Source: Isurus oxyrinchus
Taxonomy: Eukaryota
DNA: 64,000 nt
Direction: 5' to 3'
NCBI GenBank assembly: GCA_026770705.1
Contig: JANJGN010000323.1
Location: 124,001-188,000 of the forward strand
The notes beneath the pieces are model-generated. The model worked only from the letters and a program-made list of their open reading frames with translations. It was not told the origin of the DNA and ran no database searches. Every line of letters starts with the position of its first letter. Positions within the stretch are counted from its first letter, which is position 1. The position numbers and the translations under genes are program-made. This document shows, piece after piece, positions 24,528-61,361 of the stretch.

Positions 24528-24667
24528 TCAAACAGTCTGTCGACTTCCTTTTACTGTTTGTCTCTCCCAGACACAGACTCCAGCGATAGTGATAACCACA
24601 GCCACAAGGAATATCACAGCTCGTATTCCCAGGATCAGGATCACGTGCAGAATCTCTCCTCCACTGT
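24528..24667 (-). CDS. Terminal TM exon with intramembrane Arg and short tail (activating-receptor type); orphan or alternative exon
   Basis: tttctgtgtgttctctag| phase 1: SGGEILHVILILGIRAVIFLVAVVITIAGVCVWERQTVKGSRQTV*. Confidence 0.75.
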
Positions 24668-26349
24668 CTAGAGAACACACAGAAAGAAATCATCACTGGC
24701 TCTCCGCTTTCAATCTCTCACTCTGGCTGAACAATCAAGCTTCATATCACTGCAACATTTGCTGTAATATTGACCCATCCACTGGGATTCAATGTGGAAT
24801 GAATGTTTTCATTGTAAACACTCTAAGAGTGGACAATCGGAACTTTCCCCTTAGCGTGGAACATTGGTGAGAATGGATCATTGTGCTGTTGGACTCCCTG
24901 TCCAATGTTTCTCTCCATCGCTGTGTATAGGATTGTGCTGTAGAAAATTCTGGAAACGTTTAGTGCAGGGTGGAAATCCATCTCGGACGCGTGTGCGAAT
25001 CGGGCAGCATCGAGATGGACTCCCCCATGAACTTACACCCCCCGCTTAATAAACAGTTCCAATCTTTACCCAGAGAGAGGGGAGAATGTGGAACTCGCTC
25101 CCACAGGGAGTGGTTGAGGTGAACAGTATCGATGTATTTAAGGGGCAGGAGGGTCGGTAACCAGAGGGACACAGATTGACGAACCGGAGGGGGAGATGAG
25201 GAGAATTTGTTTTGACAGAGTGAGTTGCTGTGATCTGGAAGGCGCTGCCTGAAAGGGCAGTGGAAGCAGATTCAGTAGGAACTTTCAAAAGGGGAATTGG
25301 ATAAACACTTGAAGGAGGAAGATGGGGGCAAAGTGGAGTGGTGGTTAGTGGATCTGATTGGATAGAACATTGAAAGACCTGGCACAGGCACTATGGGCTG
25401 AATGGCCTCCTCCTGTGCTGTACCATTCTCCGCTTCCATGATCTCTCCCCCAGTCAGTAACGACTCCAGATCCCTCTTGAAGGTGACAGAGAATCAGCAA
25501 CCACCACACCCACTGACAGCACATTCCCGAGGATCACTACTCTCTGGGAAAAGATGAACTTGCCAACATCCAGCCTATTCCTGTTTCCCAGAGAGTGTAA
25601 ACCCTTCAGGGAGGCACTGAGGAAGTTTTCAATAAAATGACATCAAATCTACCGTTTGAGAAATAATTGAATTCTGATGAACTCACAGCTTGTGTAGCAA
25701 ACTGGGAAGTGGAGTTGCTTGAAAAGCTGGGAAACACAAGGATTAAGTGCTACAATGCCACCACTGGTAGGAGACTGTAACTACAGCGTGACGTTTACAT
25801 AGGCAGTCATCATTATAAACAGAGGCATTGGACATACTGGGAAATATGTGCACTGGAATGGTGAGTAAATGATGTAAGCTTTTCGCCAGCAGGAATTCTC
25901 TTCCTAAACCTCTCCACATCTCTCTTTTTCTCTGATACACAAACAAAGTCACACAGATTCAGATAAGGAGGATTTGGGACCGGTGATTGTTCGAAGGGTT
26001 AGCTTTCAGGAAGCTTCTTAAAGGGAGAGAGAGAGTTGGAGAGGCAGAGAGTATCTGTGAGAGCCTCTATGCATCTGAATGTCTGTAATAGACTTTAGAA
26101 TTTCCATATTCTGAGAGAGTGCTGCACTGTCGGAGGGTCAGTACTGAGGGAGTGCTGCACTGTCGGATGGTCATTACAGAGCATGTGTTGCACTATTGTA
26201 AGGTCAGTACTGAGGGAGATCTCCACTATTGGAGGGTGAGTACTGAGGCAGTGCTGCACTGTCAGAGGGACATTAATCAGGGAGTGCTGCACTGTTGGAG
26301 GATCAGTACTGAGGGAGTGCCGCACTGTTGAAGGGTCAGTATTAAGGTG

Positions 26350-36400: not shown

Positions 36401-39400
36401 GGCAGTTACAGATGGCCTTGTCAACAATGCCCATATCCCATGAGCTAATAAAAACAGAATGTTCAATTCTGTGTAACTCACGTTCCACAGTGATGGTTAT
36501 GAATCCCTCCACTGCTCCATGTTCATTCTCTGCCACACACTGATAGTCTCCAGTGTCCCTGGATGTAACGTGAGGAATCACCAACCACAGCTCATTGTTG
36601 GAACTTGTTCTGTTCATTGGGACATTAAGATGTCGCCACGTCAGGTTAGAAGCTGGGAAGCTCTCGACAGAGCAGATTATCACTGCAGAATTCCCCTCAA
36701 TTATATTGATCGATGAAGCGTTAATCACATCAAGAGAAGTAATTGAGAGATTCTGTGGTCCATCTAAAAACAAATAAACATCAATTAAGTTACACTGACT
36801 GTGAAGCACTTTGAAAGACACTGAGAATGTGAAAGGTGTGATATCAATATAGGTTCTTTCACCACAAAGCCCATAATCCAGCCAGACACCTCAGTTCAGT
36901 ACTGAGGGTGTGCTGCACTGTGGGAGGGTCAGTACTGAGGGAGTGCTGCACTGTCAGAGGGTCAGTACTGAGGGAGTGCTGTACTGTCGGTGGGTAAGTA
37001 CTGAGGGAGTGCTGCACTGTCAGAGAGTCAGTACTGAGGGAGTGCTGCACTGTCAGAGGTTCAGTACATAGGGACTGCTGCACTGTCTGATGGTCAGTAC
37101 AGAGGGGTTGCTGCACTGTCGGAGGGTCAGAAATGAGGATGTGCTGCACTCTCAGAAGGTCAGTACTGAGTGGGTGCTGCACTGTCGAAGAGTCATTACT
37201 GAGGGGGTGCTGCACTGTGGGAGGGTCAGTACTGAGGGAGCACTGCACTGTTGAAGGGTCAGTACTGAGGGAGTGCTGCACTGTCGAAGGGTCAGTACTG
37301 AGGGAGTGCTGCACTGTTAGAGGGTCAGTACAGAGGGAGTGCTGCACTGTCAGAGGGTCAGTACTGAGGGAGCACTGCACTGTTGAAGGGTCAGTACTGA
37401 GGGAGTGCTGCACTGTCAAAGGGTCAGTACTGAGGGAGTGCTGCAGTGTTGGAGAGTCAGTATTCAAGGACTGCTGCAGTGTCAGAGGCGGATTTGTATC
37501 AGTTAAAGACTATTGATTTGTTGCTAAACACAATGCAGTTGTGGGATCTTGCAGTGTACTATGTAGAGCATTCTAGCTAATGTAGATGGAAGGGTGTCTG
37601 TTCTTACCTTGCACAGTTAGTACGAGGGTCTTCTCCGATGAAACAGATGGATATCTCACTCTGCAGCTTAGAGTGTGTCCGTGGTGTTTGAGTGATGGGA
37701 TCAGGGTCAGAACAGAAGTATAGGTCAGAGTGACACCATGATGAGTTACAGTGTTTGAGACTGATCCAGGTACGTCAGTGGGAATGTCCCAGGATAAGAC
37801 AGGTGCTGCTGTTCCACTGCACGTTGTGTTGAAGGTGCAGCTTACATCCACACGCTCTCCTGCATTAATTTCAGCAGTGAATATCGTGGGTTTATCTGTG
37901 AAATCTAACAGACAGAGAATGGATCCTTTTAGAGAAATATAACGTGAAGCATCAGTTCAAATAGAAACCACAGTCCCACAAGAGAAAGCACTTTTACAAG
38001 GATGATATCAGAACTGAGATGTTTTAACGATCCTGATAGACTGTTAGACACGATTCGAGAGATCGATGGGAGTGGAATACATTTAATCATTGATATTAAA
38101 GTGAGTTTTAAATGTTGCTTTAGGACTGAACTGGAAGCTATCACCAGGTTATTGAGAATCAGACATTGTGTTATAATAAGCTGTGTTTTGTGTTAATATG
38201 TAAACGTCACAGTTTCACTTCATTGGCTGTGAATCAGTTTAGGATCGTCCTGAGGTGGTGAAAGGCGCTATGGAAATGTGAGACTTGCTTTTGTATTTTG
38301 AAAGCAGGTTTCCAAGGATGAGATGGGAACTGAGAGGTAACAACAATCAGCAGCAACTTTCTTATTTTCAAACTTGGTGGGGAATGTGTCACTGAGCTCA
38401 ATACACTTTCACTCCCAGACCCTTGAATTGCCAACACTGGGGTGTGGGTGATGGAGCAGTCCACAGCTCATGGAACCCTGGCTCATCATTCTCTCAGAGA
38501 TCTGGGTCACTGATCCCATTGCTCTCTGTGGGAGCTTCCTGTGAACAAACTCACTGCCACGTTAGACAGTGACTATACTTCAAGAATTTCTTCATTGTCT
38601 GTGAAGTGATTTGGTACATGGTGAAAGGTGCTATAGAAATGCAAGTCTTTACTTTGTCAATTTGCCAGACTTTTAAATAGGGATTAGAGAGTTCTATGTG
38701 AGTGGATAACCTGATAACATTGATGGACACAGTCAACACATTTAATCATTGATATTAAAGTGAGTATTAGAGGTTGCTTTAGGACTGAACTGGAAGCTAT
38801 CACCAGGTTGTTGAGAATCAGACAGTATGTTATAATAAGCTGTGTTTTGTGTTAATATGTAAACGTCACAGTTTGTGTTATTTCCCACTGAGTGTTGAAT
38901 GTGAATTGTTGAGTAATTATAACACAGCACTTACCAGAAATGTGAAGCCGGGTTACAGGGTAATAGTTATAGCGCGGACCATTGTCAAATTCTATTCTGA
39001 AAAAATAAGGTCCTGCATCTTCCCGTCTGATGTTGTTTATAATCAGGGAACAGTCACCATCTTTCAGGTCTCCAGACAGCCGGGTCCGATGGCGGAACCG
39101 TGGTAACTCGTGACGGTGATCCTTGGAGTGAAAGGCTATGGACAATCTTCTCCGTTCCTCATTATTAAACCAGACTCCACCTCGTGGTTGGCTTTCCAAA
39201 TGTGCTGGATAACTGTAATGACATGGAATCTGTACACACGAACCTTCCTGCGCTGTCACCTCTCGTGGAGTATCACCTTTCCACTCTTGTGACAGTCCAA
39301 CTGGGGAGAGAAAAATCAATATTTAACTCTGGATGTTTTTTCGATCCATAATTCTTGATATCCACTCCCTCCATCACTGGGGCACAGTGGCTGCAGTTTG

Positions 39401-42400
39401 GACCATCTACAGGACACACAAGTAACTCCCCAAGGTTTCACAATGGATCGATGAGAATCCTGGACACAGGAGTGGACAAGTTCATTCTACCTTGGCTCCT
39501 GGTCCTCAGGACTCTATTTAGTTTTTTCAAATTATTCATTCATGGGATTTATTACCCATCCCATGTCCATCAGAGGCATTTAATAGTCAACCACATTGCG
39601 GTGGGATTGGAGTGACATGTAGGGCACACTGGGTAAGGGTCGCAGATTTCCTTCCCTTATGGTGATCAGTGAACCAGGCTTTTTAATCCCATTCATCTGC
39701 CGTGATGGAATTCACACCCAGGGCCCCAGAGCATCACCCTTGGTCTCTGGAATACTAGCCCAGTGACAATACCTCTCTGCTACCGCTTCCCCTTAGTGAA
39801 GCCAGTCTTCTACCCAACACAGTGTCTACAAGACACACCAACTGAGATCCATTCAGTGCTGATTTACAAGACAGGACAATGGATTAGGAGCCCTCAGAAC
39901 TCCCCCCATTATCACCGTCATGAATCACTAATTAGCCTAACATTCCTGTCTGCTCTTCAACACAGCTGATTGAATCAGATTAGCCAATCTGATTGGTGTT
40001 CATTCCCTCTTCAACGTTTAAGGAATCACCAATCACTCGGCCTCTAGTTATTCTCCTGCCCACAAGAGGGAACATTCTCTGTCTACCCAGTCAATCAAAA
40101 CATTTCATCTAAACCTAGTGGTACTTGAGTATATAGTCGGGAATCCAGGGCAATGGAGACTCAGGAGAAGAGATGGAAACGCTGTGAGGTGGAACGTCAC
40201 TGAGGCCATCCGAGTTGAAGCAACTTTTGGAGAGAATTCCAAGGCAAGATCTTCGAAGTTGAAGACTGAAATCCCTCATGAGAGAAACAGAGTTTCAGTG
40301 AGATTGGTTGACTGACAGTGTTCACTGATGTCCGGGTGGGTTGTTGTGAAATCCATGGGCTCTATCTTGGTCGCGTTTACAATTTAATGAGTAATGTGGC
40401 TGTGAGACCACAGTTTGCCTGTTAATTCACATGAGCTCATGTTAATCCAGAATGTTAGGGTATAAGGTGGATATTGTGAATTATTTTATCTTTCTGAACT
40501 GGGGCAGTCAAGTTTATTTTTGTTTGTTTAAAATCCATGGAATCTTGTAGCTTTATTCTCTTTGCAAGCATCTTAAATCTCAAACCTCGTCTACTTGAAA
40601 CAAAATATTATTGGTTCCTAACTATAAATTTTCAAAAAAATTGGGTGTCTGTTCCTCCATCAGCAACTCTTCAGAATCCTGCTGAAGTCACGGATATTTC
40701 AGAAGGACAGGGAACAAGAGTTTTCTGGTATCAGCGTTTTGTGTGGGGCCCAGTTCAGTTTGAACAAATAAACAACACCATCTTTGAAAGTCATGAACCC
40801 ACCACAGCGGCACCTCCGACACATGCAGAGCTCAGGCGAGAGGCGCTTTGTTAGTGTGTTTCACAGGGTCTGCTGGAGTAGGGTCAGTGCTGAGAGGGTC
40901 TGCTCAAGGATCATAACAACCTGCACTTGCACCTTCCAAGTAATAAGATTTTGTAAATGTATTCATTCATGGGATGTGGGCGTCGCTGCCAAGGCCAGCA
41001 TTTGCTGCCCATCTCTAATGTCCCGTGACATAATCTCTGTAGCAGAGTAGAGACAATCATGATCACTCAGGATATTTGACATCTATCCACATGAACAGCT
41101 TTGACTTCCTTCTCTCTTTCAGTTATCTTACTCCCTTATTGAAGTTTCTAGCATGGTGAGAACTGGATGGTTTGCTCGGACATTTCAGAGGAACCACGTT
41201 GCTATGAGTCTGGAGTCACATGTAGGCCAGACCAGATATAGACGGCAGATTTCCTTCCCTAAAGGCCATTAGTGAACCAGATGGGTGTGTATGACAATCG
41301 ATGATAGTTTCATGGTCTCCATTACTGAGACTAACTCCCATTAGTGTAAACAGAGTGAACAGTTTTCCATTGATCCCACCTTTCCCGTTCTCTCCGGTAT
41401 TTTACACACTATTGCTCGATAATTTGATTCTGCCAAGGACCCCTTGGAAAATCATGAACCCCAGTTAGACAACCAATGGAATAAGGAATCTCTTTGGATC
41501 CTCAGTGTCTAAGGAATCTCTATGGATTCTCATTGTCTAAGGAATCTCTTTGGATCCTCATTGTCTAAGGAATCTCTATGGATTCTCATTGTCTAAGGAA
41601 TCTCTTTGGATCCTCATTGTCTAAGGAATCTCTTTGGATCCTCATTGTCAAAGGGATTATTTCTGATCCAAACCCCATATTGTTGTATTGTTGATTCCGA
41701 TGCAGCATTGTAGACTGACTTGTCCCCAAGCTCAGCACTGACCCTACTCCAGCTGACACTGTGAAACACACTAACAAAGTGCCTCTAGCCTGAGCTCTGC
41801 ATGTGTCGGAGGTGCCGCTGTGGTGGGTTCATGACTTTCAAAGATGGTGTTGTCATTTTTTTTGTTCCAACTGAACTGGGCCCCACATGAAGTGTTGATA
41901 CCAAAAACCTTGTGTTCCCTGTCCTTCTGAAACATCTGTGATTCAGCAGGATTCTGAAGATTTGCTGATAAGGGTCTTAAACTGTCTGATTGTTGATTGA
42001 TACAACACAGGAGGAGCTCATGTGACCCATCGTGCATGTGCTGACTCTTTCCCAATTCCTCTCCAACACCTTTCGCACATTCCTGCAAATTTCCCTTCAA
42101 GAATTTATCCAGTTCCCCTTCTGAAAGTTCCTGTTGAATCTGCTTCCACCGCCCTTTCAGGCAGTGAGGCAATGGTCTCTCTCTGAGCTGCAAAGTGCCC
42201 AGATTCTGTGAAATTTAAACTCTGCAGCAGATCAGAGACAATCATGATAACTCAGAATATTTGACAGTTTTACACACAGACAGCTTTGCCTCCCTTCTCT
42301 CTTTCAGTTATCTTGCTCCCTTATTGAAGTATCTAGCAAGGTGAGAATGGACAGGAAGTGTGACACTGAACAGCCTGTCTATTCTAGGAGCTGCTGTGTT

Positions 42401-47215: not shown

Positions 47216-48820
47216 GCGTGCATTCAGATTAAGAACCTTTCTGTCTTTTCCCCATTTCCCCTACTCTGACCTTATTTGCTGGGACACTGGTTGATGCTGG
47301 TTTCAGTCTCAGTTTGTCTCAGTTGGTCACACTCTGGCCTCTGTCTCGAGACTGATGTTCCCTCTTGGTAGTGACAGTGATGGGGGTGTTGGGGAGGGTG
47401 TGGATATTGACCCCACTGCTCCCCCTCCCCCGCTCCGCCATTCTTTCCTGGGAGACCCGCCAGGAACCTTGTTCCAGCTGTGATGGGCAGCCCTTCCACA
47501 CTTTCCTGTGGGCCCCGCACTTCATGTGTAAAAGCGCTAAGTTAGAGCAGGGATGGAGAAATGAACAGGGGGCGTGGGATGAGTGTGGGGGTCTCACAGC
47601 CAGAACTGACCCTGCCCACAACACTGTGGAGGGGGGTAGGTTTCACCAGCTCTCTGTCTTTGCAACATCATAACCGCAGTGTGAAGATTGTCCCCATTCC
47701 CTGTATCTTAATATTGTAAAGACAACTGGGAGATATCCTGCAGTCTCTGAGAAAGAATTTGGTGCACCTACAGCACCACCACTGGCAAGAGAGTGTAAGT
47801 ACAGTGTGAGATGTTTACATGGGAAATTTTCATGATAAATGTGGACACAGGAATTTACATAATTTGGTGGGGAAATGCAATGACATGAATTAACAGATTG
47901 GAGCAGGGAGGTTGTCCCAGAGTAGGATATTTAATAAAAATATATCTGTACAGAGTTGTCTGGGCATTTCAATCCCTTGTGACAATAAATGTAATATTAT
48001 AGAAAATGCAAAAGCTTCTTGTAATCTATCACAGAATAAACAAGTTGCAGAATTCAGAAAGCACATTCTGAAATGTTAACAATGTTCAGTGACGTCACAT
48101 TTCTGCTAATTACTATTCGGCCATGTTGGCTGCACGCAGTCAGGCAGTCCCTCGGTTGTGATGTGTCCACACAGCAGGACTGGGATGCATCAGCATCAAA
48201 GGACATGCTTAGTTGTTGCTCTGCAATGCATTTATTGCGAGCCTGTTGCACACACGCCCTGTCGAAGGAGTATCCATGGTTCCATTCTGAATCGAGGCAG
48301 ATCAAATTTACTACAACTTGCATTTATATAGCACCCATAATGTAGCAAGCTGTCCCAAAGCTCTTCAGGGGATTGTTAACCACATATAAATCCATCGCAG
48401 AGACACATAAAGAGATATTAGGGACAGGTGACCAAAAGCTGAGTTAACAAAGGCAGTTAATAAGNNNNNNNNNNNNNNNNNNNNNNNNNNNNNNNNNNNN
48501 NNNNNNNNNNNNNNNNNNNNNNNNNNNNNNNNNNNNNNNNNNNNNNNNNNNNNNNNNNNNNNNNNNNNNNNNNNNNNNNNNNNNNNNNNNNNNNNNNNNN
48601 NNNNNNNNNNNNNNNNNNNNNNNNNNGTCCCCAATGACTTAGCATCAAGTCGTCACTGGGGAAACATTTCATTCCAAACCACACCAACCATACACCCATT
48701 CAGTCCCTTCCTCCCTCTGTCCCCCTCTCCCCCAGTGGGTTGTCTCGTGTTCCCAGGAAACTTAATCTCTGCCCCCACCCACAAACCTCCTCACCCCCTC
48801 TCCCCGTTTCACACTCAGTT

Positions 48821-49063
48821 TCACTTGAATCTGATCTGTGCGTATTCCGTCTCCTCTTCCCTGTGGACAGACCCATCACCACTGGGCACCCTGAAGACTT
48901 GGGGATTGGCGTAGAGAAAGTCCGCGGGATTCTCAGGATTCCCATGTCCAGCATCACCTCCCACTGGACCTTCAGAGAGTCCCCGGGGAGCTGGGGTCTC
49001 CCCCTCACTAGTTGTGTCTCTGGTTGTGTTCCGGGGCTCAGTAATCAGCACGTTCTGTTTACC
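48821..49063 (-). CDS. Gene A last exon with FLYANP and TEYAQI motifs
   Basis: ccatttctctgtag| GKQNVLITEPR...ADFLYANPQVF...EEETEYAQIRFK*. Confidence 0.85.
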   Translation of the reverse strand, partial: GKQNVLITEPRNTTRDTTSEGETPAPRGLSEGPVGGDAGHGNPENPADFLYANPQVFRVPSGDGSVHREEETEYAQIRFK

Positions 49064-49544
49064 CTACAGAGAAATGGAAACAGAAGGCATCCTCACATCA
49101 TTTACTGGCACTGATAGGGTTAAATTATTGTGCAGCGTCGTTAGTGTCAGTCGTGGCTCAGTGGGTTTAATCCTCCCTCATGTCATCTGAAAGAAACCAC
49201 CTATGGCAGTGCAGTGCTCCCTCAGTACTGACCCTCTGATAGTGCAGTACTTCCTCAGTACTGACCCTCCGACAGTGCAGCACTCCCTCAGTACTGACCC
49301 TCCGACAGTGCGGCACTCCCTCAGTACTGACCCTCTGTCAGTGCAGCACTCCCTCAGTACTGACCCTCCGACAATGCAGCACTCCCTCAGTACTGACCCT
49401 CCGACAGTGCGGCACTCCCTCAGTGCTGACCCACTGTCAGTCCCGCACTCCCTCGGTAATGGCTCTGGTGAGTGACGGCTTGGTTTCTGCACTCAGGTGC
49501 CTGGTCTGAGGCTCAATAACATGAATCTTGTAATCAGAGAGGAT

Positions 49545-49576
<32 letters not shown>

Positions 49577-52500
49577 AAGGGACAGAGACAGAGTGTTATG
49601 AATCTTTTAATGTATGTAATGTAATTGGAAATTGTCTATTTAAGAAGAGGTTTAGTCTGTGGGTGTGTCTGTGTGTGTTTTAATTGGATTAAAGCCAGCC
49701 AGTCTGGGTATTTGATGTATAGTAGTGTTGAGATGTAAACTGAGAGATAAAAATTTGTATTTTTAAACAGAGTATTCAAAGCCTGAGAGTGAAATCTTAA
49801 ACCAATCAACATTTATTTTGTTGATAAAATTGATACTATGACAGAGGATTTATTGTTAGAAGAGATGGAGATCAAAGGTCCTGATGATACAATGAGAATT
49901 TACATTCAAAGAGAAGCACTGGGTATAACTTGAGCAGTTTTGTGTGTGCAGAGCAGAGGCTTGTAACATCAAAGCAGCTGTAAGCCTACACCTGTCTGCA
50001 AAGGAACCAAAGTGAAAGGAACCTCATTTGGAATTTGTGAGGTGAAAATGCTTTGCCTGGGTGTCTGCTTAAATTCTATGGGTTATCTTAGAGGAGATTA
50101 GTTTGGGAATTTGTTAAAAAGTTATGATAATACTCGCTTGTAGCCATGTGCATATGTTTAACTTGTGTAAATTAATAAATGTCTCATGTAGTTTGATATA
50201 ACACCGATGTCGAGAACTGGTGCTCTTATTCCTGAATTTAGAGCTGCATCTCAAACATTCCACTGGGAAATATAGGTTATGACAGTTGTTTAAAGTTTCC
50301 TCTCGGATTTTAAACAACAGCCTTTACCAGTTGCTGTGTCATAATAGAGAGACAGCATGATACTGAACCATTGCTGACTCCACAGGTACAAATCAGTGGG
50401 TAACTGGGCTGGGAATCTGGGACATGTGTTGTCTACACACTGAGATTGAAGCTTTGGAGTGAGTGTAAACAGCTCCTGTACCTGGTGCTTCACAGAGAGT
50501 GGACTGGGAGTCAATACAATGTCACTGGTCCCTGAAACTCTCTCCTCCATCGCTGTCTTTCTCCTGCAATAACACAATATCACACTGTGGTTATCATATA
50601 GCAGAGAGTCAGTGCAGCACAGACACAGAGCCCACTGTAACTTACACCAATGACTGGGACTGTCTCTTTAAATCACATCTGCACAAAGCACAGAATCAAG
50701 AAGCTTGACACCATCCAGGACAAAGCAGCTCGATTGATCTACACCCCATCCCCCACATTAAACATTCACTCCCTCCACCATGAACACACAGTGGCAGCAG
50801 TGTGTGTAACATCTACAAGATGCAACGCAGTGAGTCACCAAGCCTCCTTAGACAGCACCTTCCAAACACATGATCACTACCATCTAGAAGGACAAGGGCA
50901 GCAGACACATGGGAACACCACCACCTGGAAGTTCCCCTCCAAGTCACTCACCATCCTGACTTGGAAATATATCACCGTTCCTTCACTGTCGCTGGGTCAA
51001 AATCCTGGAACTCCCTCTCTAACAGCACTGTGGGTGTACCTACACCACATGGACTGCAGCGGGTCAAGAAGGCAGCTCACCACCACCTTCTCAAGGGGCA
51101 ATTAGGGATGGGCAATTTAATAACGGCCTCACCAGTGACAGTCACATTTGATTAAAGAATTTAAAATCTCACAGCTCAGGAGGAAGCCACTCAGCCCATC
51201 GTGCCCGTGCTGGCCCTTTGTAAAAACTGTCCAAATAGTCCTCAACAAATGTTTATATTAAAATCAAGTTAAATCTTCAGACTTACTTTCTCACACAGAT
51301 GAAGATGAAGATTCCAGCCAGGAAAACACTCAACATGATCCCAGCCGTGAACAATCCTACTGTCCATTTACTGGAGTCTCTACCTGTAAAAACAGTCATT
51401 AATTACTGCACTACAGGTTTACAATGATGCTCCGATGTATCTCGAGAAGCGATACACTCACTCAGTGTTTAAATACTCATTCTCGGGCAATGCTGACATT
51501 TATTGTCCATCCCTAGTTTCCCCTTGAGATGGTGGTGGGGGGTCTTCCTCCTGAACCACTGGTTTGTCCCAAACTGGGAGACCAGTTCAGAGGGCAGGTA
51601 AGAGTTAACCATGATGGTGTCTGAGACTGGAGTCACATATACACCCAGACCTGTTAAAATGGACAGGTTTCCCTCCCTTAAGGGTCATTAGTGACCCACA
51701 TTATATATGTAATTTCTATATATATATGTATCAAATAACCTCACTAAAATAATCAATTATCACCTCAATTGCACGCTGTTGTTTGTGGGATCTTGCTGTG
51801 TACAAATCAACTGTTGCGTTTCCTACATGACAACAGTGAGCTCACTTCGAAACTGCTTCATTGGTTATCGAGTCTTGCATTTCGATGTAATCAATTTAAC
51901 ATTTATATATATTTATCAATGTGATCCCTATAACATTAATGTATAATATTTAGCAATGTAATATATGTAACATTTATATATAATTTTTCTCGATGTAATC
52001 TATGTAATATTTATATATAATATTTATCAATGTAATCTATGTAATATTTATATATAATATTTCTCGATGTAATCTATGTAATATTTATATATAATGTTTC
52101 TCGATGTAATCTATGTAATATTTATATATAATGTTTCTCGATGTAATCTATGTAATGTTTATATATAATATTTAGTCGTTTGGGGGGAGAACCTGAGTAT
52201 TGCTGAGAAAGGACATTTTGTCAAAGCTTTCTGTCTTGCACCCAATGAAGCAGCTTATCTGGGGGAGAGGGTTCCAGATTTCCACTCCCCTTTGTGTGAA
52301 GAAGTGCTTCCTGACATCACCCCCTGAACGGCCTGGCTCCAATTTGACCAAGTGTTGCCATTGTCACATGAGGTCAGGTGATTCAAAGCTTGGTCAAAGG
52401 GGTAAGTTGTACACAGCATCTTAGAGGAGGTAGAGAGAGAGGTGGAGAGGTTGAGGGAGGGAATTCTCGAGTTTAGGGATCAATCCAGCTGAGTGGAGAT

Positions 52501-55500
52501 CGAACCTGAGCGAGTCTCTCACCTTTGACCCACAGATACACCTTGAACATGGCTTCCCCGTGTGGGTTTTGAACCGAGCAGGATGCAATCACTCCCCCCT
52601 CATCCTGGGGTCTCATCAGAGTGAGGGAACCAGTCACCAGATGCCCATCTCTGACCTGCCACGACACAAAATCTCCGTGTGTTTGGTTACCACTGATGTT
52701 GGCACTGGGCAGGTGCCAGGTGAGGTCTCCCGGTGGGTTGGAGGTGGCCACACAGACGCAGGTGACCCCCTCTGATCTCCGAGTGCACTCCGACTGCTGG
52801 GAAATCTCCGGCTTATCTGAGGAGGGAAGGACAACAATGAGACAACGTCATAGCAAAGTTAGAGCGTAAGATAGAATCTTCACACTGAAACACTCATTCC
52901 TGCCTTTGTTACCTCTGCACTCAACTATCCCAACACTCTCCTGCCCGACCTCCCATCTTTCACTCTCCATAAACATCAGCTCATCCTAAACTCTGCTGTT
53001 CCCATGTCCTAACTCACACATCACTCCCTGTTGGTCACTGAGCTACACTGGCTCCCGGTCCGACAATGCCACAATTTTAAAATTCACATCGTTTCAAATC
53101 CCTCCTTACCCCCTCCCTATCTCTGTTACCTCCTCCAGCCCCTATAACCCTCCCTATCTCTGTTACCTCCTTCAGCACCTATAACCCTCCCTATCTCTGT
53201 AACCTCCTCCAACTCCCACAACCGTCCCTATCCCTGTAACCTCCTACAGCCCATATAAAACTCGCTAACTCCGCAACCACCTTCCATCCCTACACCCCTC
53301 CCTATCTATGTAACCTCCTCCAGCCCCCACAACCCTCTCTACCTCTGTAACCTCCTCCAGCCCCCACAACCCTCCCTAACTCTGTAACCTCCTCCAGCCC
53401 CCACAACCCTCCCTATCTCTGTAAACTCCTCCAGCCTCTACAACCCTCCCTATCTCTGTAACCTCCTCCAGACCCTTCAACCCTCACTATCTCTGTAACC
53501 TCATCCAGCCCCTACAACACTCCCTATCTCTGTAACCTCCTCCAGCCCCTACAACCCTCCCTATCTCTGTAACCTCCTCCAGCCCCTATAACCTTCCTTA
53601 TCTCTGTAAACTCCTCCAGCCTCTACAACCCTCCGAGATCTCGATGCACCTCCAATTCCAGCCTCTTGACCTTCCCCCGATTCCTATCGCTCCACCATTG
53701 GCAGCCGTGCCTTCAGCTGCCTGGATCCTAACCTCTGGAATTCCCTCCCTCATTTCTCACCTCCTTCGGACAAAATGTGACCACCATCAAAAGCATCTTT
53801 CCTTCACTCCCACCCCGTTGGCATTCCACAGGGATCATTCCCTCCAGGACACCCTGGTCCACTCCTCCATCACCCCTAGCACCTCAACCCTCTCCGATGA
53901 CATCTTCCCATGCATTTACAGAAGGTGCAACACCTGCCCCTTTACTTCCTCCCCCCTCACTGTCCAATGACCCAAACACTCCTTCCAGGTGAAGCAGCGC
54001 TTCATGTACACTTCCTTCAATTTAATCTACTGCATTCACTGCTCCCAATGTGGTCTCCTCTACATGGGACAGACCAAACGCAGACTGGGTGTTCGCTCTG
54101 ATGAACACCTTCGGTCTGTCCACAAGCATGACCCAGACCTCCCTGTCGCTTGCCATTTTAACACCCCACCCTGCTCTCATGCCCACATGTCCGTCCTTGG
54201 CCTGCTGCATTGTTCCAGTGAAGCCCAACACAAACTGGAGGAACAGCACCTCATCTTCCGACCAGGCACTTTACAGCCTTCCAGACTGAATATTGAGTTC
54301 AACAATTTCAGATCACGAACTCTCTCCTCGATCTTCACTGCTTTTTGAACCCTTTTTTATGTATTCATTTTAATTGTATTTTTTGTTAACTGTTTTCCCC
54401 TTATTTTTATTATTATTATTTGAAATTCATTTCCATTTTTATTGATTGTTTTATCCACAGATTTTAGTCTATTTTCGATCTTTATTCCCTCCACCGTCCC
54501 CTCCCCCTGCCACACCCTCACGAAGGCCATCTGTCTCTTTCCAGAGTGCTTACCCTGGTCCGCCCATTATCACACTCTGCTTAATGTCACCATTAGCACC
54601 TCCTTTACCCAATACCACCACTGTTAACAACCCTTTGACCTTTTGTTTATGACATCTTCCACAATCTCTCCATTGCCTCCACCTATCGCTGGTTTTCTAT
54701 CCAGCTCCACCTGTCCCATCGCCCCGCCTTAGACAGGATATATTTCACCACATGTCTACTTCCCTTTAGCTCTGAAGAGGAGTCATACAGACTCCAAACG
54801 CTAACCCTGTCTTTCTCTCCACAGATGCTGCCAGATGCTCAGAATCAGCTGGATGGACAGAAAGACCAATGAGTGGCTTAGATCAAGAGGAGATGTTCAG
54901 CAATTAAAAGGGTTGTTCAGGACAGTTAGAGAGAGAAAGGTCGTCAAGTACGGAGATTGGAAACGAAGACCTGACAGCCTTGTCCTGACAACCATTGAAG
55001 GAGAAACTGAGAGCAAAAACAGAAAGGGAGAGGAAAAATTGGGTGTGTGGATAACGTGGACTGAGCGAGGATTGAAGAAAACTGGATTAAAAACAACACG
55101 ATCCCAATGGCTCCACGGAGACCACGGAGACAACAAACAAACAAATGTATCTCCACACTCACGTTCCACAGTGATGGTTATGAACCCCTCCACTGCTCCA
55201 TGTTCATTCTCTGCCACACACTGATAGTCACAACCTGGGCTCCCTCTGCCCTATCAGGTTGGGATAAACAATCCCAAGGGTCAATACAAGGAACAGCTCT
55301 CCCTGCTCAATATCACTCATTAAAAAAGGACCAGTTTTGTCTTCAACCCAGTGAAGTTTGTGGGATCTTGCCCAGCACATTATATCCTAATACCGCTAAT
55401 ATAGAATGAAGGGTGTCCATACTTACATTGTACAGTCAGTACGAGGGTCCGCTCTGATGAAACAGATGGATATCTCACTCTGCAGCTGAGAGTGTGTCCG

Positions 55501-58500
55501 TGGTGTTTGAGTGATGGGATCAGGGTCAGAACAGAAGTATAGGTCAGAGTGACACCATGCTGAGTTACAGTGTTTGAGACTGATCCAGGCACGTCAGTGG
55601 GAGTGTCCCAGGTTAAGACAGGTGCTGCTGTTCCATTGCACGTTGTGTTGAAGGTGCAGCTTACATCCACACGCTTTCCTGCAATAATTTCAGCAGGGAA
55701 TATCGTGGGTTTATCTGTGAAATCTAACAGACAGAGAATGGATCCTTTTAGAGAAATATAATGTGAAGCATCAGTTCAAATAGAAATCACAGTCCCACAA
55801 GAGAAAGCACTTTTACAAGGATGATATCAGAACTGAGAGGTTACAATGATCAGGAGAGAATTTCCTATTTTCAGACTTAGTGGAGTTTCTGTCACTCAGA
55901 TGAATTCATTTCCACTTTGAGACAATTGAATTGACAATCCCAGGTGAGGGTGGGGGAGCAGCTCACAGTTCCTGGCACACTGGCTTGTTACTTTCTCCGA
56001 AATCTGCCAGATTTAAATTCTATCCTGTCCCCAGCAGGAGAGAATCCATTTGAACCAATCACTGAACCGGCATCAAAAGCAGATGATCAGGTTATTGATC
56101 ACATAGCTGTTTCTGGGAGCTTGCTGTGAATAAATTGGCTGCTGTGTTTCCCATATTACAACAAGGGCTACATTTCAAGAATTATTTCATTGGTTGTGAA
56201 TCCATTTGTGACGTACAGAGATGTTGAAAGGTGCTATAGAAATGCGAATCTTTCTTTTGTCGATATGTAAGACTGTCAAACAGGGTTACGGAGATCGATG
56301 GGAGTGGATATCCTGATAACATTGATGGACACAGTCAATACATTTAATCATTGATATTAAAGTGAGTATTAAAGGTTGCTTTAGGACTGAACTGGAAGCT
56401 ATCACCAGGTTATTGAGAATCAGACAGTGTGTTATAATAAGCTGTGTTTTGTGTTAATATGTAAACATCACAGTTTGTGTTATTTCCCATTGAGTGTTGA
56501 ATGTGAATTGTTGAGTAATTATAACACAGCACTTACCAGAAACGTAAAGCTGGGTTACAGGGTAATAGTTATGGCTCGGACCATTGTCAAATTCTATCTT
56601 GAAAAAATAAGGTCCTGCATCTTCCCATCTGATGTTGTTTATAATCAGGGAACAGTCGCCATCTTTCAGGTCTCCAGACAGCCGGGTCCGATGGCGGAAC
56701 CGTGGTAACTCGTGACTGTGATCCTTGGAGTGAAAGGCAATGGGAGCCCAGGGAATCTGTTTCTCATTATTAAACCAGACTCCACCTCGCGGTTGGTTTT
56801 CCAGACACGATGGATAACTGTAATGACATGGAATCTGTACACACGAACCTTCCTGCGCTGTCACCTCTCGTGGAATGTCACCTCTCCACTCTTGTGAGGG
56901 TTCATCTGGGGAGAGAAATCTCAATATTTAACTCTGGATGGTTTGTGGATCCACTGAAACCGATATTGACAGATGAGGCTGAATTGGGGGGATGGTCAAT
57001 ACTGAGGAGAATGGCAACAAATTATTTTGGCAGGAAGAATAGAAAAACAGGATATTATTTAAATGGAGACAGGCTGCAGAATGCAGTACAGAGGGATCTG
57101 GGTGTCCTTGTACATGAATCACAGAAAGTCAGCATTCAGGAACACCACGGAATGAGGAAGGCAAGTGGAATGTTGGCCTTTATTGCAAAGGGATGGAGTA
57201 TAAAAGGAGGGAAGACTTGCAACAGCTGCACAGGGTGAGATTGTATCAGGAGCAGTGTGTACAGTTCTGGTCTCCTTACTTAGGGAGGGATAGACTCTGC
57301 ATTGAACGCAGTCCAGAGGAGGTTCACTGGGCTGATTCCTGGGATTAAGGGGTTTGTCCTGTGAGGAAATGTTGAGCAGGTTGGGCCTGTATCCATTGGA
57401 GTTTAGAAGAATGAGTGGTGACCTTATTGAAACATATCCGATTCCGAGGGGGCTTGACAGGGTGGATGCTGGGAGGATGTTTCCCCCTCGTGGGGGAATC
57501 TAGAACCAGGGAGCACAGTTTCGGAATGAGGGCTCTCCCATTTAAGACTGAGATGAGGAGGAATTTCCTCTCTCAGAGGGGTGCTAGCCTGTGGAATTCT
57601 CTTCCCCAGAGAGCAGTGGAGGCTGGGCCATTGAATAGACTCAAGGCTGAGTGAGGCAGGTTTTTGATCGACAAGGGAGTCAAGGGTTTGTGTCAGGCAG
57701 GAAAATGGAGTTAAGGCCACAACCAGATCAGTGAGAGCAGGCTCAAGGGGCCGAATGGCCTGCTCCTGTCCCTATTTCTTATGTTCCTACATTCTTACCT
57801 TCTTAAAATATTAAAGCTGCAGAATAAACATGAAGTGACTGACCCGCTCGACCCACCTTCCATCTGGGGGTCCCATGGGGAGGACCCTTCCTGAGCCAGA
57901 TCCACCAGCCAACATGGTCTGGATCCGAGCACAGGAGACACGGGGGGGAGTGACTAACAGGCTCCTTGTGACAGGCCCCGTCTGTCCAATGGCTGGCTTT
58001 CAGCTGCCAAGGCCAGAGTGGTCCTTGCTAAAACCGGCTCAGGACAGGCCAGGACCCCTGTGCAGACCCCCTCCAGCGCTGCAGCCTCTGTACAAACCCC
58101 TCATGCGCTTGTGGAGAGACACAAACAAGGCTGCACATTACCGAGGAGAATCCCCTCTACAGACTAAGGGGCTGACTCATCACCTTAAACTCAGCAAATG
58201 AGGAGGCTCTCGCTCGGTATCGGGTCTTGGCATTCGCTCAATAAAAATAATCAAATGACATTTTGGTCAGAAATCTAAGGAGGTTGTACATTCCGTCAAA
58301 AATAAGACTCAAGCTGGGGTCAAGGGTCAAAGGGCAACAACTTATATTTACACAACAACTTTAACATGACAAATCACCCCAAGGTGCTACACAGGAGCGT
58401 CATAAAACAAAGTATGTCACCCAGACACATGTGGAGATATTAGCGACAGCTGACCAGAAGAGGTCGGTGTTATGGAGAGACAGAGAGAAAGAGAAAAAGA

Positions 58501-60736
58501 GACAGAGAGAGAGAGATAGAGAGAGTGAGAGAGAGGGATGGAGAGGGGTTGAGGGAGGGTATTACAGAGCTCGGGCCCCAGGCAGCTGAAGGCATGGACG
58601 CTGATGTTGGAGTGATGTGCTCGGGGGATGGTCAAGAGGCTGGAATTGGAGGAGCGCAGAGACCTCTGAAGGTTGGTGGGTCTGGAGGAGGTTACAGAGA
58701 TAGGGAGGGTTGTAGGGGCTGGAGGAGGTTACAGAGATAGCGAGGTTTGTAGTGATTGGAGGAGTTATAGCGATAGGGAGGTTTGTAGGGGCTGGAAAAG
58801 TTAAGAGAGATTGGGAGAGTGTAGGGTCTGGAGGAGTTTGCAGAGGTAGGGAGGGTTGTAGTGACTGGGGCAGGTTACAGGGGCAGGGAAAGTTGTCGGG
58901 ACTGGAGCAGGCTACAGAGATAGGGAAGCTTTTAGGGGCAGGAGGAAGTTACAGAAATAGGGAGATTTGTTGTGGCTGGAGGAGGTTGCAGAGATTGGTA
59001 GGTTTGTTGGGCAGGATCAATTTGCAGATATAGGGAAGCGGTAGATACTTCAAGAGGTTACAGAGAATGGGATGGTTGTAGGTACTGGAGGAGGACGAGG
59101 AGATTACAGGGATAGTGCGGAAACAAAGATGAAAATTTGGACATTGCGACTTTGCTTGACCAGGAGCCAGTCTCGGTCATCGAGCAGAGTGGGTGATAAG
59201 GGAACGGGACTTGGTGTGAGTAAGGATGTGGTCAGCAGTTTTGGATGGCCTCAAGTTTATGGAGTGTAGAGCGTGTGTTGGAACAGTCGAGTCTGGAGGT
59301 AATGAAGGTGTGGATGAGGGTTTCAGCAGCAGATGAGCTGAGACAGGGTGACGTCGTGCGATGTTACGCAGGTGGAAATAGACGGTGTTAGTGAGGGTGC
59401 AGATATGAGGCCGGAAGCTCATCTCAGGATCAAATGGGACAACAAAGCTGTGAACAGATTGGCTTCAATCTCAGAGAGCTGCCAGGGAGTGGAATGGAGT
59501 TGGTAGCGAGGGAACAGAGTTTGGAGCGGGGAATGAAGACAATGGCCTCAGTCTTTCCAATATTTAATTGGAGGGAATTTCTGCCCATCCAGTACTGGAT
59601 GTCGGATAAGCAGCCTGATAATTTAGCAGCAGTGGAGGAGTCGAGAGAGGTGGTGGTGAGGTAGAGCTGGGGATCCTCAGTGGACAGGTGAAAACTAACA
59701 CTGTTCAGATGATGCTGCAAAGCCATTGCAAGTGATTCTCTGGCTACGATGAGATGGATAAGAATGGAGCCAGGGGAGAGCAGTCCCACCCAGCTGGACC
59801 ACAGTGGAGAGGGGTTGGAGGAGGATGGTGTGGTCGAGCGTGTCAAAGGCTGCAGACAGATCGAGAAGGACGAGGAGGGAAAGTTGACCTTTGTCACAGT
59901 CACACAGGATGCCATTTGTGACCTTGATAAGAGCTGTTTCAGCACAGTGGCTGGGGTGGGAACCTCATTGGAGGGATTCAAACATGGAGTTCCGGGAAAG
60001 ATGGGAATGGATTCGGGAAATGGAAACACGTTCAAGGACTTTGGAGGGGAACGAGAGGCTGGAGATGGGACGGGGGTTTACACGGACAGTGTGAGGGGTG
60101 GAAGGTGTAGTGGGGAGGAGACACTTCACTCAGGGGGGAAGTGTCATCATCCCTCAGCTCGGTTTACGTTACAGCTATGATGTGGATTCAATCACACACA
60201 ATAAGCTCATGGATCTGGGAGCAGAAATAGACAAATCATTAAAAATAGTGATGCTGGTTAACACGGCCAAAAAACAAGCAAATCAAACACTATTATTTCC
60301 CATTGAGTGTTGGATGTGAATTGTTGAGTAATTATAACACAGCACTTACCAGAAACGTGAAGCTGGGTTGCAGGATAGTAGCTGTAACTATTGCTGCTGT
60401 CAAATTCTATTCTGAAATAATAATAATGTGCATCTTCCCGTCTGATGTTGTTTATAATCAGGGAACAGTCGCCATCTTTCAGGTCTCCAGACAGCCGTGT
60501 CCTATTGCGGAACCGTGTTAACTCGCGATTGTGATCCTTGGAGTGAAAAGCTATAGTCCCTCTAGACCTTGTATTCCATGTATTCCATGTGTACCATTTC
60601 ACGTACCAGATTCCGACACGTGCTCTCCCTACTACACGTGCTGGATAACTGTAGTTACATGGAATCTGGACACACGAACCTTCCTGCGCTGTCACCTGTC
60701 GTGGAGTTTCACCTTTCCACTCTTGTGACAGTCCAA
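48821..60736 (-). CDS. Siglec-like gene A (CD22/MAG/CD33-type), 5'-partial: V1-V2-C2-C2-TM-cytoplasmic tail with an ITSM-like motif
   Basis: Phase-compatible GT-AG exons 60350-60736, 56537-56905, 55427-55723, 52523-52816, 51287-51383, 50482-50563 and 48821-49063 give one open frame. The leader exon was not found in the window. Confidence 0.8.
49594..50346 (+). mobile_element. Solo LTR-like element (same family as 43968-44797) in a gene A intron
   Basis: TGTTATG...GTGTCATAA; colinear similarity with 43968-44797. Confidence 0.6.
50482..50563 (-). CDS. Gene A cytoplasmic exon 1
   Basis: ttattgcag| RKTAMEERVSGTSDIVLTPSPLSVKHQ |gtacag; phase 2-0 links the TM exon to the last exon. Confidence 0.78.
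50690..51150 (+). mobile_element. CR1-clade LINE 3' fragment
   Basis: KKLDTIQDKAARLI, GSKSWNSL, KAAHHHLLKG. Confidence 0.8.
51287..51383 (-). CDS. Gene A transmembrane exon
   Basis: GRDSSKWTVGLFTAGIMLSVFLAGIFIFICVR; phase 1-2; uncharged TM. Confidence 0.88.
51890..52172. repeat. 37-bp AT-rich tandem repeat
   Basis: cgatgtaatctatgtaatatttatatataat recurs. Confidence 0.85.
52523..52816 (-). CDS. Gene A membrane-proximal C2 exon (MAG Ig5-like)
   Basis: YKPEISQQSECTRRSEGVTCVCVATSNPPGDLTWHLPS...ASCSVQNPHGEAMFKVYLWVK; the C-x8-CxC..SNP pattern matches last Ig domains of MAG/Siglecs. Confidence 0.88.
53790..54832 (+). mobile_element. Penelope-like element fragment (GIY-YIG)
   Basis: NLIYCIHCSQCGLLYMGQTKRRLGVR. 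Confidence 0.82.
54835..55140 (+). mobile_element. RTE-clade LINE 3' fragment
   Basis: MLRISWMDRKTNEWL...IEG. Confidence 0.65.
55163..55229 (-). pseudogene. Truncated remnant of a C2 exon (3' 67 nt only) in gene A
   Basis: DYQCVAENEHGAVEGFITITVE plus a gtgag donor, matching the end of gene B exon 36482-36763. Homology stops abruptly at 55229. Confidence 0.85.
55427..55723 (-). CDS. Gene A C2-set exon (Siglec domain-2 type)
   Basis: DFTDKPTIFPAEIIAGKRVDVSCTFNTTCNGTAAPVLTW...LSCRVRYPSVSSERTLVLTVQ; has the extra BC-loop Cys typical of Siglec domain 2. Confidence 0.9.
56537..56905 (-). CDS. Gene A V-set exon V2 (Arg replaced by Lys)
   Basis: DEPSQEWRGDIPREVTAQEGSCVQIPCHYSYPSC...GPYFFKIEF...LYVS; ctctccccag acceptor, G|gtaagt donor. 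Confidence 0.9.
56960..57785 (+). mobile_element. CR1-type LINE 3' fragment between V1 and V2
   Basis: QRDLGVLVHESQK, FKTEMRRNFLSQR. Confidence 0.85.
58330..60090 (-). mobile_element. L2-type LINE fragment with an internal minisatellite (~58670-59110)
   Basis: CLSDIQYWMGRNSLQLNIGKTEAIVF, YFHLRNIAR. Confidence 0.8.
60350..60736 (-). CDS. Gene A V-set exon V1 (essential Arg present)
   Basis: GLSQEWKGETPRQVTAQEGSCVQIPCNYSY...GDCSLIINNIRREDAHYYYFRIEF...LHVS. Siglec Cys pattern (CxxIPC, DCSL, no F-strand Cys); phase 1-1. Confidence 0.9.
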
Positions 60737-61361
60737 CTGGGGAGAGAAATATCAATATTTAACTCTGGATGGTTTGTAGATCCACTAGACTCGATATCCA
60801 CCCCCTCCTTCACGGGGTCAGAGTGGCTGCAGTGTGGACCATCTACAGGACACACAGGGATCTCCCCAGTGTTTCACAATGGATAGAAGAGAATCCTGGA
60901 CACAAAAGCGGAAATATTCATGCTACATTGGCTCATGGTCCTCAGGACCCTGTTTGTGTACAAACCTGCTCTGCAACAGAACTGAAGTTGGGGAAAATCC
61001 ATTTGGAATTCCACTGTCCAGGGCATTGTGTTAACTTGCTGAGTTTGTTTTAAATCTAACATTTATTTTTGGTCTGTTGCCTTAAAGGAAGTGTAACTGG
61101 GAGTCAGGTTAATTAGGAATTTTAGGAGTTATTATAGCAGTCATTGTAGTCTTATGTATGTGCTTGAAATCTTTTATTTTGATGACAAATATTTTAATTT
61201 ATTGTTTTAAATCTCTAAATGTCTTGATGGAGTTATAGCTTCTGAATTCAGTGCACAATCATAACAAATACCAATTGCAAAATCATTATGATAGTGAGAC
61301 CAAGTTCCTCTCATGGAGTTGGTCTGCCTGGCACACATCACCTGCCAAGTGATAACACTGT

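What the first reader, a model, noticed from the sequence alone, without database searches (positions are those of the whole stretch)
56537..60736. Siglec with two tandem V-set domains, the inner one lacking the essential Arg
Seen: two V exons with short shared flanks and no recognisable leader, C2 or TM exon between them (mostly LINE sequence). V1 keeps YYFRIE (AGA at 60411-60413); V2 has YFFKIE (AAG at 56598-56600). V2's start is DEPS rather than the leader-like VGLS. Known: Siglecs normally have one V-set domain (Siglec-12 has two), and Arg-to-Lys impairs sialic-acid binding. Inference: a convergent V-V Siglec in which V2 became a spacer, or alternative V exons that switch binding on or off.
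Basis: partly seen in the sequence, partly recalled or inferred. Interest (0 to 1): 0.8.

Follow-up and report, generated by a model that had tools for sequence, protein, structure and literature searches.

The report
Shark Siglec gene, two V-set exons
A shark immune-receptor gene of the sialic-acid-lectin (Siglec) type carries two intact lectin-domain exons in a row, the inner one with lysine where the sugar-gripping arginine should be; the layout is old, common in sharks and rays, and already in automatic annotations, so this is a solid but ordinary family member.

Summary
On the minus strand there are two intact phase 1-1 V-set exons, V1 at 60736-60350 and V2 at 56905-56537. Both have consensus splice sites and share only about 60-nt flanks. 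They are separated by 3.4 kb of repeats that contain no leader, C2 or TM exon. V1 has Arg (AGA) at the position that aligns with the essential Arg of Siglec-5/-7; V2 has Lys (AAG).

V2 is spliced to the next C2 exon in contigs of three runs. The V1-to-V2 junction at this locus was not seen, so tandem inclusion is inferred:
- RefSeq models of great white and basking shark have the same V-V-C2-C2-TM-tail layout.
- V1 falls in an "outer V" clade and V2 in an "inner V" clade.
- V2 carries a BC-loop Cys found in 22 of 29 inner, 0 of 16 outer and 1 of 71 single V domains.

The two-V layout is not peculiar to this gene. Models with two to four V domains are annotated in many sharks and rays, and this scan already reported genes with two to seven V exons elsewhere in this genome. 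The Lys is unusual: 25 of 30 inner domains keep Arg. I found no paper on multi-V elasmobranch Siglecs. New member of a known kind; modest interest.

The parts
60350..60736 (-). V1: outer-type Siglec V-set exon, 387 nt, phase 1-1, reading (V)GLSQEW...YYFRIE...HVS
   Evidence: Sequence and splice sites. Translation. Pfam V-set 43.1 bits and Ig_CD22 44.1 bits. Sits in a 98* clade with the outer V domains of lamniform V-V models.
60411..60413 (-). AGA codon: canonical Arg kept in V1
60737..60955 (-). End of the intron upstream of V1, colinear with the leader-to-V intron of the neighbour gene B. The leader of this gene is predicted about 0.8 kb beyond the window end.
   Evidence: Blastn gave 85% identity over 219 nt to 39301-39519, plus two further colinear blocks. 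The gene B leader MIGKSYFLLSLLQ lies at 42881-42843.
56906..60349 (-). V1-V2 intron, 3444 nt, repeat-derived. No leader, C2 or TM exon was found in it.
56537..56905 (-). V2: inner-type Siglec V-set exon, 369 nt, phase 1-1, reading (D)EPSQEW...YFFKIE...YVS
   Evidence: Sequence. Translation. Pfam V-set 45 bits. Sits in a 96* clade made mostly of inner V domains. 90-94% identical to inner V domains of great white shark models.
56598..56600 (-). AAG codon: Lys at the canonical Arg position of V2. It differs at two bases from the AGA of V1 and V3.
56805..56807 (-). TGT codon: BC-loop Cys, a hallmark of inner-type V domains
   Evidence: Census of distinct V-domain sequences: Cys at this position in 22 of 29 inner, 0 of 16 outer and 1 of 71 single.
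55427..55723 (-). First C2-set exon, 297 nt, phase 1-1, with the CTFNTTC pair of cysteines
   Evidence: 95% identical to P0158. Pfam C2-set_2. The acceptor at 55723 is fixed by the contig joint 56537->55723 in X1, X6 and X7. Donor read.
55164..55229 (-). 3' remnant (last 22 codons) of a second C2 exon; not a usable exon
   Evidence: tblastn with P0005 matched only residues 428-449. The full exon is present in gene B at 36761-36483.
52523..52816 (-). Membrane-proximal Ig (C2-type) exon
   Evidence: 91.5% identical to P0158. Pfam Ig_3 and C2-set_2, both below threshold. Acceptor read.
51286..51384 (-). Transmembrane exon (uncharged); coordinates are those of the tblastn match
   Evidence: 32 of 33 residues identical to P0158.
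50458..50583 (-). First cytoplasmic exon; approximate coordinates from the tblastn match
48818..49081 (-). Last cytoplasmic exon with the Tyr motifs FLYANP and TEYAQI and the stop codon; approximate coordinates

Best explanation
This is one gene of the large shark and ray Siglec-like receptor family. Its layout is leader (outside the window) - outer V (V1) - inner V (V2) - C2 - C2 - TM - tail with Tyr motifs. Most likely both V exons are spliced in series.

V1 keeps the canonical Arg, sits at the tip, and would be the sialic-acid-binding head. It is also the fast-evolving domain, with a Trp-rich inserted CC' loop.

V2 belongs to an old class of inner V domains. Its extra BC-loop Cys probably pairs with the extra N-terminal Cys of V1. 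This would copy the V-to-C2 interdomain disulfide of ordinary Siglecs. With Lys in place of the Arg, V2 in this gene probably no longer binds sialic acid in the canonical way and serves as a stalk or spacer.

Shown: the exon anatomy, the domain classes, the Lys, and V2-to-C2 splicing.
Inferred: V1-to-V2 splicing at this locus, the V-V disulfide, and loss of binding by V2.
For: Anatomy:
- Both exons are intact, phase 1-1, with consensus sites.
- dN/dS is 0.45 to 0.61 among V1, V2 and V3, with no stops despite dS of 0.14 to 0.46.
- The rest of the gene matches the great white shark model P0158 ('Siglec-13 isoform X2', L-V-V-C2-C2-TM-tail) at 95% (C2), 91.5% (second C2) and 97% (TM).
- The basking shark model P0002 ('Siglec-12 isoform X3') joins a V1-like domain (Trp-rich CC' loop) to a V2-like domain (SCLENQPRGG...PWAPI).

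Family:
- All 7 top HMMER hits to V1 have 2 to 4 V-type stretches.
- V1 falls in a 98* clade of 4 with three lamniform outer V domains.
- V2 falls in a 96* clade of 21 (15 inner, 4 single, V2 and V3) that spans three shark orders.
- BC-loop Cys is present in 22 of 29 inner, 0 of 16 outer and 1 of 71 single distinct domains. The one 'single' case is a model that starts MEAEPS and is probably truncated.

Spacing of the cysteines:
- In V2 they lie 5 before and 7 after the B-strand Cys.
- In CD33, Cys36 lies 5 before Cys41, and Cys169 lies 6 after Cys163. Passages in PMC13220637 and PMC7426717 state Cys41-Cys101, Cys163-Cys212, and that C169 is in an interdomain disulfide. Cys36 as the partner of Cys169 is recalled.

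RNA-type contigs:
- The joint 56537->55723 (GT..AG on the gene strand) appears in X1, X6 and X7, which come from three studies. One X7 contig has 0 other letters in 100 on one side and 4 in 158 on the other.
- In X1, three contigs continue from V1's acceptor into letters that read ...KSYFLLSLLQ, a leader.
- One X1 joint links a V-exon end to a V-exon start.

The Lys:
- It aligns with the essential Arg of Siglec-5 and Siglec-7.
Against: - No V1-donor to V2-acceptor joint (60350->56905) appears among the 15 joints shown, and 265 joints were not shown.
- All four runs are only guessed to be RNA. They are contigs, laid at 90% likeness, so paralogues can lie on these exons. V1 and V3 are nearly identical over their first 75 nt.
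- The X1 V-to-V joint has both sides on V1 with one changed letter. It therefore comes from a paralogue or another species, not from V1->V2 here.
- The X1 leader letters differ at 1 of 30 from gene B's leader, and gene A's own leader is outside the window.
- RefSeq models are predictions.
- 7 of 29 inner domains lack the BC-loop Cys while the preceding domain still has its N-terminal Cys, so the proposed disulfide is not obligatory.
- Lys might retain weak or altered binding. This was not tested.
Confidence: 0.7

Rival explanations
1. The two V exons are used as alternatives (mutually exclusive or with frequent skipping). The cell would then make a binding-competent V1 form and a Lys-bearing V2 form of the same receptor.
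For: All exon combinations stay in frame, because every Ig exon here is phase 1-1 and both V2 and the C2 exon start with AT. Only the V2->C2 junction was actually seen. One great white shark model (P0197) starts directly at an inner-type V.
Against: No V1->C2 joint (60350->55723) is among the joints shown. The related models join outer and inner V. The inner-type BC-loop Cys is almost confined to domains that follow another V, which makes sense only if they are normally preceded by one. P0197 has no signal peptide and looks like a truncated model.
Confidence: 0.15
2. One of the two exons, or the whole gene, is no longer used. It would be a decaying copy in a fast-turnover gene cluster, and the Lys would be a sign of relaxed constraint.
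For: - The cluster shows decay nearby: a C2 exon reduced to its last 22 codons at 55229-55164.
- An earlier scan note describes an orphan TM exon at about 24.5 kb; one search matched it.
- The leader could not be checked.
- With about 120 codons and dS of 0.14, an open frame alone is weak evidence of constraint.
Against: Both exons keep perfect splice sites and all four structural cysteines. dN/dS is below 1. V2 is spliced to the C2 exon in contigs of three runs, one of them nearly identical to the window. The layout without the lost C2 exon equals that of the annotated model P0158.
Confidence: 0.1

Closest known systems
RefSeq models of lamniform sharks: 'sialic acid-binding Ig-like lectin 13 isoform X2' of Carcharodon carcharias (P0158) and 'lectin 12 isoform X3' of Cetorhinus maximus (P0002)
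   Same: The order is leader, outer V with a long CC' loop, inner V with SCLENQ...PWAPI, C2, C2, TM, and a tail ending in EYAQIRFK. Identity to the window is 86-92% in V2 and 91-97% in the C2 and TM exons.
   Different: Their inner V keeps Arg (YFFRI), while this one has Lys. Their inner V starts VGLS, while this one starts (D)EPS as in P0167, P0005 and P0001. V1 is only 72-73% identical. These are predicted proteins, and I could not see their transcript support.
Primate Siglec-12 / human Siglec-XII
   Same: Two V-set domains in a row ahead of C2 domains and an inhibitory-type tail. Natural loss of the essential Arg occurs: human R122C makes the protein unable to recognise sialic acids (passages of PMC6288428).
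   Different: Not an orthologue. A primate Siglec-12 (P0113) is a distant hit at 31% identity and E = 8e-14, while elasmobranch relatives are at 60-73%. In the human protein the lost Arg is R122; that this lies in the N-terminal V is recalled. Here the inner V carries the change.
CD33 (Siglec-3), as the model for Siglec disulfides and the Arg-to-Lys mutant
   Same: The extra Cys lies 5 residues before the B-strand Cys of the V domain. In the following domain a Cys lies 6-7 residues after its B-strand Cys. The Arg sits in a YFFR motif.
   Different: In CD33 the following domain is C2-set. Here it would be a second V-set domain.
Ray models with four V domains (Hypanus sabinus P0003, Mobula hypostoma P0162)
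   Same: The outer V keeps Arg while inner V domains carry Lys or Ser at that position.
   Different: Their V domains cluster with one another and with ray single-V proteins (support 94, unstarred). The multiplication there therefore looks independent of the shark outer/inner pair.

Membership tests
Siglec (I-type lectin) V-set domain | V-set Ig domain most similar to Siglec N-terminal domains | tested here: met
   Pfam V-set and Ig_CD22 are above threshold for V1, V2 and V3. The best solved-structure matches are Siglec-5, -7, -8, MAG, Siglec-10, CD33 and sialoadhesin.
Siglec (I-type lectin) V-set domain | B- and E-strand cysteines plus an extra N-terminal cysteine for the interdomain bond | tested here: met
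   All three cysteines are present in V1, V2 and V3 and in 129 or more of 130 relatives' domains. The bonds themselves are inferred.
Siglec (I-type lectin) V-set domain | Essential Arg on the F strand (YxFR motif) | tested here: not met
   Met in V1 (AGA) and V3 (AGA). Not met in V2, which has AAG = Lys opposite the Arg of Siglec-5 and Siglec-7.
Siglec (I-type lectin) V-set domain | Binding of sialylated glycans | not testable with these tools
   Needs recombinant V1, V2 and V1-V2 ectodomains on glycan arrays.
Elasmobranch multi-V Siglec-like receptors (as annotated in RefSeq) | Outer-type V followed by inner-type V, then C2, TM and tail exons in one gene | tested here: met
   Exon order and identities. 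Clade placement. BC-loop Cys.
Elasmobranch multi-V Siglec-like receptors (as annotated in RefSeq) | Both V exons present in one mRNA | tested here: inconclusive
   The V2->C2 joint was seen. A leader-to-V1-type junction and a V-to-V junction were seen in X1 but cannot be assigned to this locus. The V1->V2 joint is not among the rows shown.
Mammalian SIGLEC12 orthologue | Orthology to the CD33-related SIGLEC12 gene | tested here: not met
   The nearest relatives are all elasmobranch. A primate Siglec-12 is a remote hit. No joint tree with mammalian Siglecs was built.

The most novel reading that the evidence does not exclude
Sharks have a dedicated class of inner V-set domains, older than the split of lamniform, carcharhiniform and orectolobiform sharks. 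This class acquired a BC-loop cysteine so that one V domain can be disulfide-locked onto the next, exactly as a V domain is locked onto a C2 domain in ordinary Siglecs. That would allow lectin heads to be stacked into rigid stalks. In this gene the stacked inner head has then given up its sugar-binding Arg and become pure stalk. It would be a natural intermediate between a multi-headed lectin and a single-headed lectin on a V-domain stalk.
Probability: 0.3. Interest if true: 0.5.

Novelty: new member of a known kind. Interest (0 to 1): 0.3.

Why it matters
Textbook Siglecs have one lectin head; primate Siglec-12 is treated as the exception. This gene adds to evidence that stacked V-set heads are a regular, old design in cartilaginous fish. 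It also offers a clean natural pair for testing what an inner head is for: an outer V with Arg and an inner V with Lys plus a class-specific cysteine. The value is for comparative immunology and Siglec structure. It does not change a major picture, and the layout is already recorded by automatic annotation and by earlier reports of this scan.

Tried and rejected
- Leader or promoter between the V exons: a pattern scan for MIGKSYFLLSLLQ-like peptides and for LLQ followed by a donor, and a word-7 blastn of gene B's 5.7-kb upstream region against the V1-V2 intron, found only repeat matches. Rejected as far as homology can show. A novel, unrelated first exon cannot be excluded.
- 'Recent duplication inside this gene': rejected. 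V2 is closer to V3 of the neighbour gene (87% DNA, 83% protein) than to V1 (81%, 63%), and V1 and V2 fall in different clades.
- 'LINE' identity of the intron: four ORF pieces gave no Pfam family at E <= 0.01. I did not pursue it.
- Searching for same-species protein fragments that bridge V1 and V2: the word search with V1 gave only 3 hits, at 57-71% identity. The V2 search was not run.
- Literature: 'siglec' + 'shark' gave 325 papers, and none of the 15 listed deals with shark Siglecs. 'siglec' + 'cartilaginous' + 'V-set' gave 3 papers with 2 listed, neither on this topic. In the whale shark genome paper I saw passages only; it merely lists Siglecs among Ig families, and its Supplementary file 9, which I could not open, may list such genes. 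'Not in print' therefore rests on these two searches of open-access text only.
Exons were searched one by one. No structure was predicted, because the tool returns no coordinates with which to measure a Cys-Cys distance.

Full report
**What is there**

The gene lies on the minus strand. V1 is 60736-60350 (387 nt) and V2 is 56905-56537 (369 nt). Each follows ...ctctccccag and precedes gtaagt, and each is an open phase 1-1 exon.

Both pass Pfam's V-set threshold and match the CD22-type first Ig domain. Their best solved relatives are Siglec-5, -7, -8, MAG, Siglec-10, CD33 and sialoadhesin.

In those alignments the Lys of V2 (AAG, 56600-56598) lies opposite the Arg of the YFFRVE and YFFRME motifs of Siglec-5 and Siglec-7. 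V1 (AGA, 60413-60411) and V3 of the next gene (AGA) keep Arg. AAG differs from AGA at two bases, so a single sequencing slip is unlikely.

That this Arg is essential for sialoside recognition is stated in passages of PMC10122656. CD33 R119K is used as a mutant that cannot bind sialic acid in passages of 10.1101/2025.07.28.667311.

**Surroundings**

tblastn with V1 and V2 found a third V exon at 39298-38936 (V3, minus strand) and a divergent one on the plus strand at 8755-9033.

With full-length relatives as queries, the exons downstream of V2 are:
- C2 exon at 55723-55427
- a 22-codon remnant of a second C2 exon at 55229-55164
- Ig exon at 52816-52523
- TM exon at about 51384-51286
- two tail exons at about 50583-50458 and 49081-48818, with TEYAQI

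V3 begins a second gene, gene B, whose leader MIGKSYFLLSLLQ is at 42881-42843.

No leader was found upstream of V1 inside the window. However, the 3.3 kb upstream of V1 is colinear with gene B's leader-to-V intron, which puts gene A's leader about 0.8 kb beyond the window end.

Nothing exon-like lies between V1 and V2. That intron consists of dispersed repeats and a 37-bp tandem array. Its LINE nature could not be confirmed.

**How the two exons relate**

V1 and V2 share 505 nt at 81% identity, which is the exon plus 61 nt upstream and 57 nt downstream. Beyond that, V1's upstream side matches V3's upstream side (83% over 663 nt). V2's downstream side matches V3's downstream side for 1.6 kb at 87-91%.

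V2 is closer to V3 than to V1. dN/dS among the three is 0.45 to 0.61.

**Relatives**

An HMMER search of 1.84 billion representatives with V1 gave 1083 hits at E <= 0.001. All 7 top hits have 2 to 4 V-type stretches.

Their sources name them as RefSeq models:
- Cetorhinus maximus: 'Siglec-12 isoform X3', V-V-TM-tail
- Scyliorhinus canicula: V-V-V
- Hypanus sabinus: four V domains
- Mustelus asterias and S. torazame: V-V

A word search with the basking shark model gave 114 elasmobranch proteins, among them several great white shark V-V models.

The model P0158 has exactly the layout of this gene and is 91-97% identical in V2, the C2 exons and the TM exon, but only 72% identical in V1. No protein is identical to the window, so the species is a relative of these lamniform sharks or the gene is an unannotated paralogue.

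Directly adjacent V domains also occur in predicted Siglec-like proteins of amphibians, a turtle, teleosts and primates.

**Outer and inner classes**

The tree has 70 V domains, 122 columns, a quick search and a midpoint root, and many forks are unresolved.
- V1 sits in a 98* clade with three lamniform outer V domains.
- V2 and V3 sit in a 96* clade of 21 that holds 15 inner domains from three shark orders and 4 single ones.
- Ray domains cluster apart.

In a census of 130 V domains from 104 of 113 proteins, the BC-loop position that is Cys in V2 (56807-56805) is Cys in 23 of 30 inner, 0 of 18 outer and 1 of 82 single domains. On distinct sequences the counts are 22 of 29, 0 of 16 and 1 of 71. 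The single exception is a model that begins at an inner-type V.

The canonical Arg is kept in 18 of 18 outer, 25 of 30 inner and 72 of 82 single domains. The five inner exceptions (four Lys, one Ser) are all in two ray models. One truncated great white shark model (P0156), left out of the census, has Lys in its outer V.

The spacing of V2's cysteines mirrors CD33. There, C169 lies six residues after the C2 domain's C163 and makes an interdomain disulfide (passages of PMC13220637 and PMC7426717). That its partner is Cys36 of the V domain is recalled.

**Expression**

No listed run is on record as RNA, and all are Logan contigs. I laid X1, X4, X6 and X7, which come from four studies, on 55400-61000 at 90% likeness.

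- The joint 56537->55723, GT..AG on the gene strand, stands in X1 (2 contigs), X6 (2) and X7 (1). The X7 contig has 0 other letters in 100 on one side and 4 in 158 on the other. V2 is therefore a spliced exon.
- In X1, three contigs run from V1's acceptor into letters that I translated by hand as ...KSYFLLSLLQ. They differ at 1 of 30 letters from gene B's leader.
- One X1 joint links the end of a V exon to the start of a V exon with one changed letter. Both sides lie on V1, so it comes from a paralogue or from X1's own species, whose contigs differ from the window by 3-4%.
- The V1->V2 joint itself is not among the 15 joints shown, and 265 were not shown.
- Some contigs run unspliced across exon borders (records 16, 18, 20).

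Paralogues can lie on these exons at this likeness, so only the V2->C2 junction counts for this locus.

**Verdict**

The best reading, at about 0.7, is an ordinary member of the shark outer-V/inner-V Siglec-like receptors in which the inner V has lost the canonical Arg. Alternative use of the two exons (0.15) and a decaying copy (0.1) remain possible.

The scan had already reported multi-V Siglec genes on other DNA of this genome, and those reports also found the layout in annotations but in no paper. My own searches agree.

What this case adds is the Lys in an inner V of a shark and the census showing that the BC-loop Cys marks inner V domains.

Noticed in passing
window 38836-39525 (V3 of gene B) compared with V1 and V2: V3 looks like a mosaic. 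Its upstream flank and first ~25 nt are V1-like (49 of 50 against 43 of 50 for V2). Its body and downstream intron are V2-like (for example 46 of 50 against 35 of 50, and 47 of 49 against 28 of 49). This fits a two-V gene collapsed to one V by recombination between the exons, or gene conversion.
   Followed up: partly
window 55164-55229: Only the last 22 codons of a C2 exon remain in gene A. Gene B has the whole exon at 36761-36483. The spacing implies a deletion of about 0.86 kb in gene A.
   Followed up: partly
window 8755-9033, plus strand: A divergent Siglec-type V-set exon on the opposite strand, about 33% identical to V1.
   Followed up: no
window 24531-24800, minus strand: An exon matching the activating-type C-terminus (charged TM...RTVKGSRQTV) of models P0006 and P0013 at 52-80% identity. 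An earlier scan note calls it an orphan tail exon.
   Followed up: no
window 30464-33686, minus strand: A 3.2-kb tandem array that reads as hundreds of INNQTPFR-like units in one frame. It is satellite DNA inside gene B's tail region, not a gene as far as I can tell.
   Followed up: no
window 58671-59094: A 37-bp tandem array with related arrays at about 13.2-13.9 kb and 53.1-53.8 kb. It carries by far the highest contig depth in all four runs.
   Followed up: no
protein P0156 (Carcharodon carcharias LOC121274079): This RefSeq model starts inside a V1-like domain (MKWYTWNTW...), has Lys at the canonical Arg of that outer V, and carries the cytoplasmic tail twice. It is probably a fused or mis-joined model.
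   Followed up: no
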